This document shows positions 44,801 through 49,524 of a DNA stretch of 64,000 nt, in pieces. The stretch is from Saccostrea cucullata (Eukaryota), in NCBI RefSeq assembly GCF_032062105.1, contig NW_026920225.1, positions 62,001 to 126,000 of the forward strand, in the 5' to 3' direction. Under the pieces are notes generated by a model. The model made no database searches, had not been told where the DNA came from, and worked only from the letters and a program-made list of their open reading frames with translations. The number at the start of each line of letters is the position of its first letter. Position 1 is the stretch's first letter. The translations under genes were made by a program, and so were the position numbers.

Positions 44801-47800
44801 CAAATGATAAAAATGCTATATAAAACAATGTCATAGTCACGAAGTTTAACCCGTAAATTAAGGCATGAAAAAGTACAACTGAATAATATTTATCAGGATG
44901 AATATGCAGACATATTTACAACAAATCCAATGATTTCCATAATGGCATATAATAAACATAGGAACATAAATGAATTGTTTATTAGATCAAAACTCAAATT
45001 GAATAAAATGCAGTGAAAATGAATGATGTGTTCACTAGGTGGGCCCCTCATCTGCTCATGAGGCTAGCTTTTCCATGTATTACGTACCCGAAATTCAGAT
45101 TTGTTTGTTCGTTGTTTACAGTCCCTTTTGAAAATTTATTCACTCATATGGAGACGTCAAAACACCTCCGAAACACTCTTAATTAGTCATGGTGAATTTT
45201 ATTATCAAATTGTTTCAAGAGTGAAGAAATCTAGTTAGCTAAAGGCATAAGATTGAGACATCGCCTTTGTTTATAAAGAACTACTTCTCTGTAATCGTGC
45301 ACATCTAGGCACTATTTTGTTTCCATCAAATGCTTGAAAATCACAGTAGAACAAAGTCGGCCGTTCTGACAAAAACTGATTTTGATGAAATTGTATTTGG
45401 TTGATAATAAAAAAAAATTATGAATCATCTTATTTAAAAAATCTTTCCAGTCGGCGCGATTTAACTGGGTCGGTCGCGTTAGGGGAAACAAAGGTATTTT
45501 TTATTTTGGCCTTAGAAACATATATTTTTTTTAATTTCAGAATTGTCTGGATTAGGACTGGCCAGTTCTAGGAGTGATGTGCCGCCGAGTGACATGCAAG
45601 CGTTTATTGATCAGTACCGGGATAGAATGACGTCGGAGGAAAAGATAGGGTACTACGATGTAATGATTCTGTATGCAGAGGACGATCGAGAGTTAGCAGA
45701 AAGTTACAAAGAGCACCTGCAGAATGATATAGTGTTAGAGGGAGGGCGGAGAGTGACCGCGGTGCTATACGATGATCAGGAACTGGTGTCTCTAGCAGGG
45801 TCAAAGATAAAGAGTCTGGATTTCTGCTTTCAGAGATGTACTTTTGCCTTTATTTATCTCACCAAGAAATTTTGTCAGTGTGAATGGTCCACTTTATCAA
45901 GTGAGGAGTGCTTAATGGAATCTATTTATAACCCCAAAAAGAAATGGTGTGTGGTGCCTGTATATACAGTGTCTAGAGCCAAAGCAGACTTCAAAATCCC
46001 CATGGGGCTGAACGCTCTGAAGGGAGTTAACTTTTATAACAATGATGATTTTTATCGCAGAGGTTTAAGACGTTTAATCGGTGACAAAGTCAGTGTAAGA
46101 CTAAATCATAACTCAGAACATTTCCACAAGCAATACATGGCAGCATGCCGAATAAGAAATGAGGACATTGTAAGAAAGAAAACAGAGGAGGCTCTGAAGC
46201 GACATGAGGAATTAAGATATGAACGTCTGCAACAGGAATTGGAGTTTAAAAAACTTAAAGAAAATATGCCTCCTCATTCAAAACTGGCTCCCTCTGAGAC
46301 TGAAGAGAGGATGACAGACTCCATTGTGATAGAGAAACAGAGAATTAAACTGCAGGAGTGTAATGATTCTAGACATTATAAAAAATCACCTATGGAGTCC
46401 GGGACTGATAGCTTCGGATCAGAAGTTGGCATGGACTCCAAACCATCAGAATTGACATCTCTCTATTCTATGAAAAGTTCTGGGAAAATTCCAAGCATGC
46501 ATGATGAGAAACCTGGAAAAACTCCAAGCATGCATGATGAGAAACAAAGAAAAACTCAAAGCATGCATGATGAAACAGTAACACAACATGGAGATCAAAG
46601 TATATTACAAATGGACTATGCCAGTGAGGTTATTGCAGCAAAAACTTCAGAGGATATAGTGAAAGAATACCGACAAGGTATAGAGGTTCATCATTACCAC
46701 CACTATCCAGAGGGCCCTGGGCATGTCACACATAACTATAACATAGCTAATGCTGAGAATGTTGCCATTGGGAAAAAGGCCACCATCGTTTCGACTCGGG
46801 AAAATGATAAAGTTATCGACGAGGAGGAAAATAGGAGGAACAGCTTACGGTAAATCTCACCCAACCTCTAAATTAATGACACCTTTGTTTAATACTGTAT
46901 CTATACTGTGCAGCTTATTTTTATTGCAGTTTAATATACATGTATATTCTAATTGTACATGCATTTAGCAAATAAAATTGTATGGTACATGTATATCCAC
47001 TTGACAAGAGATTTTGCATAACCATGCTTTATGTTTTGTTGTTTAAGTTAATACTTTTGCTTTGTCTTTAAGGTCTAGTGGTTCATTTCAAAGTGTGGAT
47101 GGTGGTTTGAGTACACCAAGTAACTCACTAGTAAGGGGACGTCACTCTGACGGAGACACTCAGGCCCCGGAATCAGTACCAATGACTTCACAAAATTATC
47201 TACCAAACACACCGCCCATCAGAGAAGAAAGCTTGAAAAACGATGAAAATGTTAGTGAAGTAAAGACTGTGATACGGGCAAATCCTAGCGAAGAGAAAAA
47301 GAATATCTCCGGTGATGAAAATTTCCCATCAAACCATTCTAGTGCAGTAAAACCAGATAAAAACCCTTCACCAAATCATCCTAGGGTTGGCCCCAGTAGA
47401 CCAATGAAACCACTCCCTAGTGGGCCTAGGCAGAACTCAAAACCAGTGGTAGTCCCTGTTAAACCGATGGTGTCCATGCCTGATAAACCCAGCAGTGAGG
47501 ATTCTGATACTTTGTTAAAGACACCATATGGAGGAACCGATTCCCAGTGCACAGACGTTAAAAGGACTCAAACAACTGGTGCAAGCAGCCCAGTGAGTGA
47601 TGACGAAAATACAGACTTAAAAAGAATCATCACCCCAAATATAACTAGTAACGGTCCTCAGGAGGAGACCAAAGTGAAGCAAATTCTGCCAGTGAATCAG
47701 ACAATACCATTAGTGGTCATGGAAAAGATGCAGGGCAGCTGTAAACCCAACGTTGTGGCTCGAGGTTGTCCCCCCTTAGGGGCCCCAGAGCACCCAGTGA

Positions 47801-49524
47801 TGCCCTCAATCAGTGATTCATCCGACATTGTGGAGGACTGTCCGGGGTCGGAGACAGGTACAGACAGGGACAGTGCGGAGTATGTAACCGTGCATAAAGA
47901 GGACGTAGAATCGTACTCAGAGAGCCTAGGAACAGATGTTGACAGTGGCTTTAGTGAGTATAAAATTTCTTCATTTATATTATACCCAAGATTTTCAAAG
48001 TTCAGTACAAGAAAATATTTTTTTCTCACTGAAAATCTACAGGCATTGTCTCAAGTGTAATTGATTTCCTTTTAAGAGATCTCAAAATTGTAAAAGAAAA
48101 CTTTTGAAGATTTTACTCGATATTCTAACTCTTAAACAGTAAAAATTAATTTACTTTTCTTTGGTATGTGAGAATAAATAAAACTGATTTATAAATAGAA
48201 ATAAAATTTCTTTCAGTGCTGACAGACGTAGAAAAAGAGTTGGATTGTGTAAAGAAGGCTATGGAAATGGGATACTTAAAAAGTTGCATCAAACAAGCTT
48301 TGAATAAATTGAGTGCTAGAGGTAACATGACTTTTGTTTTCAACTTAACCTTACTTTTCTTAAACTTTAATACTTGATTCATTTTCAAAGACACAACTAT
48401 ACAAGATATTTTATCCACCCTTATATGCTAATACGTATTTGTGAGAGCTAAGCCTGAGTTTGAGAGCTACCTTATGATACATATGGTGCTACAATCCTGT
48501 GATGCATCATGGTACAGCTTTCGGCAATTAAATCGGCTGATATCGGCCTAATTTTGGGTCCTTTGGACATTATTTTTCCCCCAAGATTTACTAAATTTAA
48601 TATTGTAACTTTCACAGGTAAAACAGTGGACATTAACAGCTTGCTTGATGAAATGCATAGAATAAACATTGAATCAACTTCACCAGAGTCAAGTAAGAAA
48701 TGAAAAAGAATATTAATATTGAATGGTTCTCTTTAATACCGGTATGGAGTCAAGGATAGACAAATCTCGATTTCAATCCCAATAAGTTTCATGTCACAAA
48801 TGTCTTCTCAAACTTTTACCTCCTGGTTTTGGACATTATTTTTAACCCCCCTATATACGAAGTTTGTATATAGGAATCACCTTGTCCCTCTGTCCGTATG
48901 TCTTTGCAAACGTTTCACAGGTCCATAACCATTACAGAGGGACATTAAAGCTACTACTCCACACAAAAATTGCCCATGACCTAAGGGTGTGTCATAACCT
49001 TGACCCAAGGTCATTTGGGGAAGTTCAAGGTCACTGGAAGAAAAATTTCATAATTCGTGTCCGGTCCATATCTTTCTTATGGATAAACTTGGTAGGTTCT
49101 CATTTCACACAAAGATTGCCCATGACCCAAGGGTTTGTCATGACCTTGACCCAAGGTCATTTTGGGATGTTCAAGGTCAATGGAAGAAAAATTCTTTCTT
49201 ATGGAAAAACTTACTTCTGAAAAACCCAATTTGTCCCTTTTGGACAGTTTTTTTCTTTAGAGAAGTCTGTATATATAAATTTTAAAGTTCTATGAATACA
49301 GATTATCTTTGCCATTCCATGTCATATTTTCAAAACTCTGTCTTATGCATTTTTTTCCAGCAGATGTAAACCCAGATTGCAAGATCTCAAAACAAGCGCA
49401 GAAAACCTCCAGCAAATTCAGTGATAAAAAATCACATGACAGCAAATCAAATGACACAAACAGCAGACAAAAATCTGGAATATTGCAGAAATTTTTCAGT
49501 AACTTTACGAAAGGTGGAAATTGA
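41839..49524 (+). CDS. TRIF/TICAM-like adaptor: TIR + coiled coil + RHIM-like motif + UBA-like domain (~872 aa)
   Basis: ACCACCATG at 41839. Exons 41839-41923, 45541-46849, 47073-47953, 48217-48321, 48618-48692, 49361-49524 join in frame (2619 nt). TIR: YYDVMILYAEDD...CTFAFIYLTKKF...ESIYNPKKKWCVVPVY...IPMGLNAL. RHIM-like: YNIANAENVAIG. UBA-like: VKKAMEMGYLKSCIKQALNKL...DINSLLDEM. Confidence 0.88.
42153..42763. mobile_element. TIR MITE with internal palindromic repeats
   Basis: TGCCCTGTTCACA...TGTGAACAGGGCA flanked by TTAA (or TA). Internal duplicated block CGTTCACACGGGGAATTTAATATGAATTAGTTTAATTCGAATTAG. Confidence 0.8.
43424..43598. mobile_element. Tc1/mariner (pogo/Tigger-like) MITE
   Basis: TA-CAGTAAAACTCG...CGAGTTTTCCTG-TA. 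Confidence 0.8.
43608..43845 (-). mobile_element. Bivalve SINE with TSD
   Basis: (GATT)n tail at left, tRNA-like head at right, TSD TAATAGAAA at 43599-43607 and 43846-43854. Confidence 0.85.
44169..45511. mobile_element. Non-autonomous PIF/Harbinger-type element
   Basis: ~40-bp TIRs GGCC...AAAAATA.CTTTGTTTCCCCTAAC.CGACC with a TTA TSD on both sides. It ends 29 bp upstream of the TIR exon acceptor. Confidence 0.85.

What the first reader, a model, noticed from the sequence alone, without database searches (positions are those of the whole stretch)
46680..48692. TIR-RHIM-UBA architecture: TRIF-like amyloid adaptor with its own ubiquitin reader
Seen: IEVHHYHHY...VTHNYNIANAENVAIGKKATIV (RHIM-like core VAIG with a His-rich beta-prone leader). 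Two small exons, the first missed by the ORF track, encode VKKAMEMGYLKSCIKQALNKLSARGKTVDINSLLDEMHRI, with the MGF/Y loop and LL helix of UBA domains (IAP-like). The protein ends in an amphipathic GILQKFFSNF segment. Known: TRIF signals to RIPK1/3 through RHIM amyloid and has no UBA; Drosophila IMD signalling couples cRHIM amyloid to ubiquitin chains through separate proteins. Inference: one protein links TIR sensing, amyloid assembly and polyubiquitin binding. I do not recognise this as a described architecture.
Basis: partly seen in the sequence, partly recalled or inferred. Interest (0 to 1): 0.8.

Follow-up and report, generated by a model that had tools for sequence, protein, structure and literature searches.

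The report
Oyster TRIF-like adaptor with RHIM-like and UBA-like parts
This oyster gene really encodes one spliced protein joining a TRAM/TRIF-type TIR domain, a conserved histidine-rich RHIM-like (amyloid-type) motif and a UBA-like domain. That matters because TRIF-style immune adaptors have been thought to exist only in chordates.

Summary
RNA-seq junctions join 45541-46849, 47073-47953, 48217-48321, 48618-48692 and 49361-49524 into one mRNA. It starts at ATG 41839 and is 100% identical over its two large exons to the unnamed Saccostrea cucullata protein LOC134245229.

- **TIR:** it is closest to human TRAM, by sequence profile (E 7e-7) and by fold.
- **RHIM-like motif:** the His-rich 'HHYHHY...NYNIANAENVAIG..ATIV' block is the only conserved island in a disordered region. 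It fails Pfam RHIM, because the tetrad Q is A. It still aligns in register with the oyster's own canonical RHIM (hhalign P 1e-4; 0 of 600 shuffles reach the score). About 49 relatives from molluscs and a brachiopod carry the same module, 10 of them with Q at tetrad position 2 (8 VQIG).
- **UBA-like domain:** every Pfam score is below threshold, but the signal is consistent. Seven of 8 PDB profile hits are UBA domains (best E 4e-4), and the model is a confident three-helix bundle. The ubiquitin docking test gave weak support (0.43 against controls of 0.00).

Amyloid formation and ubiquitin binding remain inferences. I rate it a new variant of a known kind. The scan had already noted the TICAM-like gene pair on this window and the RHIM-death-domain gene on other DNA.

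The parts
41839..41923 (+). First coding exon (MSSRSRLDSQVSVDAQPSFMPSSPMVDLE, last codon split); ATG at 41839, donor GT at 41924
   Evidence: tblastn of P0022 residues 1-35. Sequence read. The 118 loose letters of contig X1 upstream of 45539 encode the same peptide.
45541..46849 (+). Large exon holding the TIR domain, a charged helical stretch, three SMHDE repeats and the His-rich/RHIM-like module
   Evidence: ORF. Joint 46849|47073. 100% identical to P0022 residues 29-465.
45597..46121 (+). TICAM (TRAM/TRIF)-like TIR domain
   Evidence: Family TIR profile matches exon residues 19-193. Its best PDB sequence hits are TICAM-2, E 7e-7. AF2 model has pLDDT 84, and the best Foldseek hit is human TRAM TIR at E 1.2e-4, TMt 0.75. 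Pfam TIR_2 gives only 15 bits against a cut-off of 28.
46680..46808 (+). Bipartite module: His-rich leader IEVHHYHHY, PEGPG turn, then RHIM-like NYNIANAENVAIGKKATIVST (tetrad VAIG at 46761-46772)
   Evidence: Conserved across 15 homologues. hhalign against the oyster canonical RHIM gives P 1.1e-4 in register, and no shuffle reaches that score. RIPK3 RHIM is matched in the same register at E 0.023. Pfam RHIM does not match.
47073..47953 (+). Exon encoding a 293-aa Ser/Pro-rich, poorly conserved linker
   Evidence: Joints. No Pfam family found. Low conservation in A1.
48217..48321 (+). Exon with helix 1, the MGY loop and helix 2 of the UBA-like domain
   Evidence: Joints 47953|48217 and 48321|48618. 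Pfam UBA_BIRC2-3 E 0.009 on this exon alone.
48618..48692 (+). Exon with the loop and helix 3 (VDINSLLDEMHRI) of the UBA-like domain
   Evidence: Joints. The UBA profile of orthologues hits UBA domains in the PDB. AF2 gives a three-helix model.
49361..49524 (+). Last coding exon, with an alternative acceptor at 49364. It is basic and Ser-rich, then ends in the amphipathic tail SGILQKFFSNFTKGGN (49474-49521) and the stop codon
   Evidence: Joints 48692|49361 and 48692|49364. ORF. Tail conserved in oysters and replaced by CK[MI]S in mussels and scallops.

Best explanation
The gene is Saccostrea cucullata LOC134245229, about 871 aa from six coding exons. I read it as a cytosolic Toll-like-receptor adaptor of the TICAM (TRAM/TRIF) type.

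**Shown**
- One spliced, expressed mRNA.
- A TIR domain whose nearest solved relatives are TRAM and TRIF.
- A conserved bipartite module just downstream: a His-rich strand, then a motif of the form N-I-x-x-A-x-N-V-x-I-G-x-x-x-T-I-V. It matches canonical RHIMs in register.
- A three-helix UBA-like domain with an MGY loop near the C-terminus.
- A conserved C-terminal tail.

**Inferred mechanism**
1. TIR-TIR assembly under an activated receptor concentrates the His/RHIM-like segments.
2. These segments stack into a RHIM-type cross-beta oligomer.
3. The oligomer templates other RHIM carriers of the same genome. The obvious candidate is the RHIM plus death-domain adaptor, the RIPK1 tail (IMD-like gene), which would lead to FADD/caspase-8/NF-kB-type output.
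4. The UBA-like domain binds ubiquitin chains built on the complex, either to hold ubiquitin-dependent kinases or to send the assembly for clearance.
5. The tail holds the adaptor on a membrane. It is amphipathic in oysters and a CaaX box in mussels and scallops.

**My odds**
- Architecture real: 0.9.
- The motif is a divergent RHIM by descent: 0.7.
- It forms an amyloid-type assembly: 0.5.
- The UBA-like domain binds ubiquitin: 0.5.
For: - **Splicing and expression:**
- **Identity with a database protein and orthologues in Mytilus, Saccostrea and Ylistrum:**
- **TIR:** the profile hits TICAM-2 at E 7e-7 and TICAM-1 weakly, and no other adaptor TIR at E<=1. The best Foldseek hit is TRAM, and TRIF filaments are also listed. 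Relatives pass the Pfam TIR_2 threshold.
- **RHIM-like, statistics:** hhalign P 1.1e-4 over 25 ungapped columns, NVAIG on NVQVG. None of 600 column shuffles reaches the score of 24.7; the shuffle maximum is 16.5. RIPK3 RHIM is matched in the same register.
- **RHIM-like, genome context:** the two best non-self matches to the family profile in the 1.17-Gb genome lie in two neighbouring large open frames, L002 and L003. They read NIYIDARNVILGDHGTIV and MHITATNVMIGDNNTMV. L002 is a clear TIR paralogue with the motif just downstream of the TIR; L003 is not recognised by the TIR profile.
- **RHIM-like, family:** about 49 of 170 relatives carry a His-rich leader followed by an hxhG tetrad. Ten have Q at tetrad position 2: VQIG in 8, plus IQIG and VQLG. 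The Lingula member reads IINIYNSSGIQIGNHN and scores 19.8 bits on Pfam RHIM, against a cut-off of 20.
- **Candidate partner:** a canonical RHIM (26 bits) followed by a death domain is encoded in the same genome.
- **UBA-like:**. Docking with ubiquitin scored 0.43 against a best control of 0.00. This is weak support: the mark was reached by 51 of 78 solved complexes and 2 of 108 mismatched pairs, but passes at 0.60 or below are more often wrong than right. The runs agree in at least 87% of their contacts, and partner pLDDT is at least 72.
- **Tail:**
Against: - Pfam RHIM does not score this protein, its orthologues or the paralogues, even at E<=10.
- The tetrad has A where canonical RHIMs have Q, and N sits at +2 rather than +3.
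- The family profile hits hexapeptide-repeat and designed beta-propeller proteins in the PDB at E-values equal to the RIPK3 hit.
- No UBA model reaches its gathering score. Foldseek finds nothing significant for the small domain. The best VIA-align match is the Regnase-1 C-terminal domain, which is not a UBA.
- The docking verdict is only weak. UBA-ubiquitin complexes are well represented among solved structures, so the score may reflect likeness rather than binding.
- There is no biochemical or immune-challenge evidence of any kind.
Confidence: 0.6

Rival explanations
1. The His-rich/NVxIG block is a conserved short linear motif or beta-strand with a different role. It might be a Zn2+/pH-sensitive histidine switch, a docking strand for a folded partner, or a single hexapeptide-like turn. 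It would not form RHIM-type amyloid, and the likeness to RHIM would be convergent.
For: - Pfam RHIM does not match.
- Position 2 of the tetrad varies freely in the family: A, I, V, M, H, L and T as well as Q.
- Hexapeptide-repeat proteins score the same as RIPK3.
- The conserved HxHxH leader is not part of the RHIM definition.
Against: - The match to the species' own canonical RHIM is in register and far above shuffled controls.
- Relatives carry textbook VQIG/IQIG with flanking N-I and N residues.
- Drosophila and shrimp cryptic RHIMs, which keep only V-x-x-G or even just the G, are reported to form functional amyloid (PMC10268257, read).
- The oyster's canonical RHIM is itself preceded by IHIH.
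Confidence: 0.3
2. The C-terminal three-helix bundle is a UBA-like fold that does not read ubiquitin. It might instead be a dimerisation or protein-docking module, as in several UBA-like or CUE-like domains.
For: - All UBA family scores are below threshold.
- The best VIA-align match is the Regnase-1 C-terminal domain, Z 6.2.
- Foldseek gives nothing significant.
- The M of the MGY loop is L or I in three oyster orthologues.
- The docking result is only weak.
Against: - Seven of 8 PDB profile hits are UBA domains, best UBAP1 at E 4.4e-4. The alignment covers helix 1, the MGY/F loop and helix 2.
- Different orthologues hit six different UBA-clan Pfam models at the same place.
- Docking with ubiquitin scored 0.43, against 0.00 in all three controls.
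Confidence: 0.35
3. The downstream small exons do not belong to the TIR gene, so the architecture is a gene-model artefact or an untranslated read-through. The large exon's frame does hit TAA immediately at the donor site.
For: - Exon-only ORFs ending at ...SLR are what the protein database mostly holds.
- Low read depth continues into intron 1.
Against: - Every junction is seen in two raw-read RNA runs, and one 3337-nt contig spans all exons in frame.
- Full-length proteins of the same layout are predicted or assembled in three oyster lineages, three Mytilus species and scallops.
Confidence: 0.03

Closest known systems
TRIF / TICAM-1 (vertebrates)
   Same: A TIR of the TICAM type followed C-terminally by a RHIM-type motif in a long disordered tail. 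TRIF TIR structures are among the fold matches and a weak sequence match.
   Different: - There is no TRIF N-terminal domain; only about 47 residues precede the TIR.
- I saw no pLxIS motif, checked by eye only.
- The tetrad is VAIG, not VQLG.
- The protein has a His-rich leader, a UBA-like domain and a C-terminal membrane-type tail, none of which TRIF has.
- The literature read here holds TICAM adaptors to be chordate-only (PMC9334734; PMC9440496).
TRAM / TICAM-2 (vertebrates)
   Same: It is the nearest solved TIR by sequence profile (E 7e-7) and by fold (E 1.2e-4, TMt 0.75). Both appear to be lipid- or membrane-directed adaptors. TRAM N-myristoylation is from my own knowledge.
   Different: TRAM is short and has no RHIM and no UBA. 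Its membrane signal is N-terminal, whereas here the tail or CaaX box is C-terminal.
Drosophila and crustacean cryptic RHIMs (PGRP-LC/LE, IMD, shrimp SRB2)
   Same: A V-x-x-G core that departs from the (I/V)Q(I/V)G rule, placed in an innate-immune adaptor. Such motifs are reported to form signalling amyloid (PMC10268257; PMC13506858).
   Different: The carriers are not TIR proteins. In that pathway ubiquitin reading is done by separate proteins. The motif here is closer to canonical RHIM than the arthropod ones are, with flanking N-I, N-V and T-I-V.
Oyster RHIM plus death-domain adaptor (RIPK1 tail, IMD-like; G000 contig C2547)
   Same: The same genome and the same motif register: SIHIHNSKNVQVGSNNVMVV against NYNIANAENVAIGKKATIVS. 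It is the likely homotypic partner.
   Different: It passes Pfam RHIM at 26 bits. It carries a death domain rather than a TIR, and it has no UBA-like domain.
UBA domains of UBAP1, cIAP1/XIAP and USP5
   Same: Helix 1, an MG(Y/F) loop and helix 2 in the sequence pattern, with a three-helix bundle.
   Different: There is only about 20-26% identity, and the match is below family thresholds. The loop between helices 2 and 3 varies in length among orthologues.

Membership tests
TIR domain (Pfam TIR_2, PF13676) | Score at or above the Pfam gathering threshold (28 bits) | tested here: not met
   The window exon scores 15 bits and orthologues 12.8-19.5 bits. Relatives in the same profile family do pass: P0047 at 29.5 and P0049 at 31.3 bits.
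TIR domain (Pfam TIR_2, PF13676) | Flavodoxin-like alpha/beta TIR fold | tested here: met
   AF2 model with pLDDT 84 and pTM 0.82. All 10 Foldseek hits with E<=0.001 are TIR domains.
TICAM (TRAM/TRIF) adaptor family | TIR closer to TICAM-1/2 than to MyD88, MAL, SARM or receptor TIRs | tested here: met
   PDB profile search gives TICAM-2 at E 7e-7 and TICAM-1 at 0.88. SIGIRR at 0.49 is the only other TIR at E<=1. TRAM is ranked first by fold. No phylogeny was made.
TICAM (TRAM/TRIF) adaptor family | TRIF N-terminal helical domain and pLxIS motif | tested here: not met
   Only about 47 residues precede the TIR. Pfam scans give no TRIF-NTD hit. I found no pLxIS by eye.
RHIM (Pfam PF12721) | Core tetrad (I/V)-Q-(I/V/L/C)-G | tested here: not met
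   The window has V-A-I-G at 46761-46772. Ten of the relatives carrying the module have Q at position 2: VQIG in 8, plus IQIG and VQLG.
RHIM (Pfam PF12721) | Score at or above the Pfam gathering threshold (20 bits) | tested here: not met
   No hit at E<=10 for the window motif, orthologues or paralogues. The positive control in the same genome scores 26.4 bits. The Lingula relative scores 19.8 bits.
RHIM (Pfam PF12721) | Flanking pattern alignable in register with canonical RHIMs | tested here: met
   hhalign P 1.1e-4 over 25 columns without gaps. None of 600 shuffles reaches the score. RIPK3 residues 40-54 are matched in the same register by both profiles.
RHIM (Pfam PF12721) | Forms cross-beta homo- or hetero-oligomers | not testable with these tools
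   This needs ThT, SDD-AGE, EM or solid-state NMR.
Cryptic RHIM (V-x-x-G; Kleino et al. 2017, as cited in PMC10268257) | V-x-x-G core with invariant G in an immune adaptor or receptor tail | tested here: met
   V and G of the tetrad are invariant in 15 homologues.
UBA domain (Pfam UBA clan) | Score at or above the gathering threshold of a UBA model | tested here: not met
   The best scores are 16.5-17.3 bits against cut-offs of 22-27. Six different UBA-clan models are hit at the same site in different orthologues.
UBA domain (Pfam UBA clan) | Compact three-helix bundle with an MG(F/Y) loop after helix 1 | tested here: met
   AF2 gives pLDDT 81 with helices at 12-26, 30-42 and 49-62. The G is invariant and M-G-Y/F is in most orthologues. 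The PDB profile gives UBAP1 UBA at E 4.4e-4, and 7 of 8 hits are UBA domains.
UBA domain (Pfam UBA clan) | Binds ubiquitin | tested here: inconclusive
   Complex prediction with oyster ubiquitin gave weak support: 0.43 against a best control of 0.00.

The most novel reading that the evidence does not exclude
A TIR-to-RHIM-amyloid-to-death-domain relay, the logic of TRIF to RIPK1, was already present in the ancestor of molluscs and brachiopods, and so probably in early bilaterians. That would make vertebrate TRIF and the arthropod IMD cryptic RHIMs two remnants of one ancient system. In pteriomorph bivalves the adaptor additionally gained a built-in ubiquitin reader and a lipid or amphipathic anchor. 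The invariant histidine-rich strand would act as a pH- or zinc-gated switch for nucleating the amyloid.
Probability: 0.3. Interest if true: 0.85.

Novelty: new variant of a known kind. Interest (0 to 1): 0.66.

Why it matters
Reviews and genome surveys read here say that TRIF/TRAM-type adaptors arose in chordates. They also say that molluscs lack RHIM-bearing receptors and an IMD-type adaptor.

This gene and its roughly 49 detected relatives show a TRAM/TRIF-like TIR joined to a RHIM-type motif across bivalves, an abalone and Lingula. A canonical RHIM plus death-domain partner sits in the same oyster genome. Together these give a concrete, testable candidate for the long-sought MyD88-independent branch of molluscan Toll signalling, in animals where viral and bacterial disease is an aquaculture problem.

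The UBA-like domain, if it reads ubiquitin, would put amyloid assembly and ubiquitin reading into one polypeptide. These two steps are carried by separate proteins in flies and mammals. The histidine-rich leader is a new feature whose role in controlling assembly could be tested.

None of these domains passes standard thresholds in this protein, which explains why all members are labelled 'uncharacterized'.

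Tried and rejected
- **Pfam on single exons and on nine full-length orthologues.** No RHIM hit; TIR and UBA were sub-threshold only.
- **Foldseek on the UBA-like model.** Nothing at E<=0.001. The VIA-align re-ranking gave low Z values typical of any small helical bundle.
- **His/RHIM-like profile against the PDB.** The RIPK3 hit (E 0.023) is tied with designed 'Cake' propellers and a gamma-carbonic-anhydrase hexapeptide repeat, so this search alone proves nothing.
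- **Whole-genome six-frame search with that profile.** It found only two neighbouring open frames (one a clear TIR paralogue) and no non-TIR carrier.
- **Kinase exons upstream of the RHIM-death-domain exons.** No open frame of 55 aa or more looked kinase-like within 20 kb. Earlier scan notes say the kinase is a separate collinear gene.
- **Neighbouring head-to-head TIR gene (30268-32499, minus strand).** It is a paralogous TIR with no His/RHIM-like or UBA-like match.
- **Literature.** Searches for TIR+RHIM in bivalves, oysters or Lophotrochozoa, for TRIF-like/TICAM-like, for cRHIM and for ecTIR-DC found no description of this architecture. Gerdol et al. 2017, the catalogue of bivalve TIR proteins, is not in the library and could not be read.
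- Whole-protein tests used the natural database proteins P0021 and P0022 and their orthologues instead. The modelled and docked UBA-like domain is therefore that of the Saccostrea echinata orthologue, which has the RNA-supported exon junction.
- **P0022 isoform.** It carries three extra residues (AFT) at the exon C/D junction, which the reads do not show.

Full report
**1. What is there**

The window is from the oyster Saccostrea cucullata. The database protein P0022 ('uncharacterized protein LOC134245229 isoform X2', 874 aa) is 100% identical to the two large exons.

On the + strand the gene has these coding exons:
- 41839-41923
- 45541-46849
- 47073-47953
- 48217-48321
- 48618-48692
- 49361-49524

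I derived the boundaries from the sequence. All the internal junctions within the stretch laid with reads (45300-49800) are seen in RNA: GT..AG joints at 46849|47073, 47953|48217, 48321|48618 and 48692|49361. A NAGNAG alternative uses 49364. The joints appear in two oligo-dT raw-read runs, and one 3337-nt contig spans all these exons. That contig carries 118 further 5' letters that encode the end of exon 1.

The reads are mostly 90-99% identical, so they probably come from close relatives or divergent haplotypes.

Whole-protein tests used natural database orthologues.

**2. The family**

Word-indexed searches found exon-level ORFs and then full-length proteins of 811-946 aa. These come from other oysters, three Mytilus species, S. 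echinata and the scallop Ylistrum. All are unnamed.

In their alignment, overall identity between lineages is about 30%. The invariant columns fall in three blocks:
- the TIR domain;
- H-x-H...N-I-x-A-x-N-V-x-I-G;
- G / A-L-x-x-L / L-D in the C-terminal block.

**3. TIR**

- Pfam TIR_2 matches end to end, but below threshold.
- A profile of 15 family TIRs hits human TICAM-2 (TRAM) in the PDB at E 7e-7 and TICAM-1 (TRIF) at 0.88. No other adaptor TIR appears at E<=1.
- The AF2 model (pLDDT 84) is a TIR fold whose best Foldseek match is TRAM (E 1.2e-4, TMt 0.75). TRIF filament structures are also listed.
- One relative was even auto-named after TMED7, the partner in the vertebrate TMED7-TICAM2 read-through.

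The 'TRIF-like' label is justified for the TIR. No TRIF N-terminal domain exists here.

**4. The RHIM-like module**

*Against membership.* The Pfam RHIM model scores neither this motif nor those of orthologues and paralogues. The tetrad is VAIG, not (I/V)Q(I/V)G. In the PDB the family profile matches RIPK3's RHIM (E 0.023) no better than unrelated beta-repeat proteins.

*For homology.*
- **(a) A canonical RHIM in the same genome.** Pfam RHIM run on the whole genome finds SIHIHNSKNVQVGSNNVMVV at 26 bits. The next exon is a death domain, E 3e-7.
- **(b) Profile-profile match.** Comparing the window family with that RHIM and three orthologues gives P 1.1e-4 over 25 ungapped columns, with NVAIG on NVQVG. 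None of 600 column-shuffled controls reaches the score of 24.7. The shuffle mean is 8-9 and the maximum 16.5. Both profiles match RIPK3 in the same register.
- **(c) Neighbouring open frames.** The two best non-self matches to the family profile in the 1.17-Gb genome lie in two neighbouring large open frames, L002 and L003. They read NIYIDARNVILGDHGTIV and MHITATNVMIGDNNTMV. L002 is a clear TIR paralogue with the motif just downstream of the TIR; L003 is not recognised by the TIR profile.
- **(d) Wider family.** An exhaustive HMMER search with the TIR profile found 413 relatives. Of the 170 sequences I hold, 49 have a His-rich leader followed within about 50 residues by an hxhG tetrad. Ten have Q at tetrad position 2: VQIG in 8, plus IQIG and VQLG. 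Others have VAIG, VIIG, VMIG and further variants.

Named members come from Lingula anatina, Haliotis, Solemya, Potamilus, Ruditapes and Mactra. The Lingula motif, IINIYNSSGIQIGNHN, scores 19.8 bits on Pfam RHIM against a cut-off of 20.

So the window's motif is a Q-less member of a lophotrochozoan TIR plus His/RHIM module. It fits the 'cryptic RHIM' (V-x-x-G) grade that is reported to form signalling amyloid in flies and shrimp (PMC10268257 and PMC13506858). Whether this one forms amyloid is untested.

**5. The UBA-like domain**

- The first small exon alone hits UBA_BIRC2-3 at E 0.009.
- Different orthologues hit UBA_6, UBA, UBA_2, DUF1421 (UBA-like), UBA_BIRC2-3 and UBAP-1_UBA2 at the same site. 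All are below threshold.
- A profile of nine orthologues hits UBAP1's UBA at E 4.4e-4, and 7 of its 8 PDB hits are UBA domains.
- AF2 gives a three-helix bundle at pLDDT 81.
- Fold searches are not discriminating for so small a domain. UBA domains of UBAP1, XIAP, USP5 and Cbl are among the top rows, but the best is the Regnase-1 C-terminal domain at Z 6.2.
- Docking with the oyster's own ubiquitin gave weak support: 0.43 against a best control of 0.00. The mark was reached by 51 of 78 solved complexes and 2 of 108 mismatches, but passes at 0.60 or below are more often wrong than right. Runs agree in at least 87% of contacts, and partner pLDDT is at least 72.
- The UBA-like block occurs only in the oyster, mussel and scallop orthologue group.

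**6. The C-terminus**

Oysters end in a conserved amphipathic (P/S)G(I/L)(L/F)Q(K/R)(F/I)(F/L)..F. Mussel and scallop orthologues end instead in K-C-K-(M/I)-S, which looks like a CaaX box. Both suggest membrane attachment, but that is inference.

**7. Mechanism, rivals and novelty**

These are set out in the dedicated fields. In brief, I think this is a membrane-associated TICAM-like adaptor. TIR-driven clustering would nucleate a RHIM-type assembly that can recruit the RHIM-death-domain protein, and the UBA-like domain would read ubiquitin on the complex.

The main rivals are that the motif is a non-amyloid linear motif, and that the bundle does not bind ubiquitin.

The literature I could search holds TICAM adaptors to be chordate-only. 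It reports no RHIM-bearing receptor or Imd adaptor in molluscs, while one review places the origin of RIPK1/3 in Mollusca. I found no description of this architecture. The key bivalve TIR catalogue (Gerdol et al. 2017) could not be read, so prior mention of the family under an 'ecTIR-DC' number cannot be excluded.

**8. Relation to earlier notes of this scan**

- One note on this window already calls this gene and its head-to-head neighbour TICAM-like. I confirm the TIR kinship of both.
- Notes on other DNA of this genome describe the RHIM-death-domain gene as the detached tail of a split RIPK1. My independent Pfam search found the same exons. I did not test the split.

Noticed in passing
G000 contig C2547:142643-145699 (L006); duplicate on C2848 (L007): A canonical RHIM (SIHIHNSKNVQVGSNNVMVV, Pfam 26 bits) is followed by a death-domain exon (E 3e-7). 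It is conserved in other bivalves (P0036-P0038). A 2023 paper states that the Imd adaptor and RHIM-bearing PGRP receptors were not found in molluscs. Earlier scan notes call this gene the tail of a split RIPK1.
   Followed up: partly
G000 contig C22872 (L002 712-1968 minus strand; L003 460-2040 minus strand): Two neighbouring large open frames about 18 kb apart each carry a RHIM-like motif, NVILGDHGTIV and NVMIGDNNTMV. L002 is a clear TIR paralogue with the motif shortly after the TIR. The L003 frame is too divergent for the TIR profile, and its TIR likeness is by eye only.
   Followed up: partly
window 30268-32499, minus strand: A head-to-head neighbour with a 743-aa open frame holding a paralogous TIR (family profile E 9e-16). 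Its tail is long, Ser-rich and disordered. It has no His/RHIM-like or UBA-like match.
   Followed up: partly
window 48077-48089: Probable micro-exon. In run X22, 19 reads insert 13 letters (CGATCTCAAAATT) between exons ending at 47952/3 and starting at 48217. The net effect is +12 nt in frame, giving about RSQNL instead of M just before UBA helix 1. It is rare in run X23. The exact boundaries are unclear because of a mismatch at the junction.
   Followed up: partly
window 48860-49230 (intron 4): A repeated element with an internal duplication of about 130 nt. RNA depth is 200-300x in the raw-read runs, against 5-30x for the gene's exons, and many reads run on into other copies. It is probably an abundant transcribed short interspersed or MITE-like repeat.
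   Followed up: no
window 46478-46575: Three imperfect tandem copies of a 10-11-residue unit (GK(I/T)PSMHDEK...) lie between the TIR and the His-rich leader. They are present in Saccostrea orthologues only.
   Followed up: no
P0019, P0020, P0024 (Mytilus); P0040, P0041 (scallop-like) C-termini; window 49376-49390: Mussel and scallop orthologues end in K-C-K-(M/I)-S, a CaaX-like box after basic residues. Saccostrea has an internal D-C-K-I-S at the start of its last exon and then continues for 45 residues to the amphipathic tail. This might be a remnant of the ancestral end.
   Followed up: no
window about 47870-47895 (DSAEYVTV); Mytilus orthologues (EENWVTV after the UBA-like domain): Acidic-aromatic-x-x-V strings resembling LC3-interacting regions lie near the UBA-like domain, at different positions in oysters and mussels. 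With a UBA domain this would recall autophagy receptors. This is pattern-matching only.
   Followed up: no
P0015 (Mytilus trossulus LOC134707859), P0029 (Mytilus coruscus): Relatives of the same TIR type are fused to other C-terminal parts: a trypsin-like peptidase domain (PF13365) and a DZIP3-like HEPN domain (PF18738). The TIR therefore appears to be a shuffled module in bivalves.
   Followed up: no
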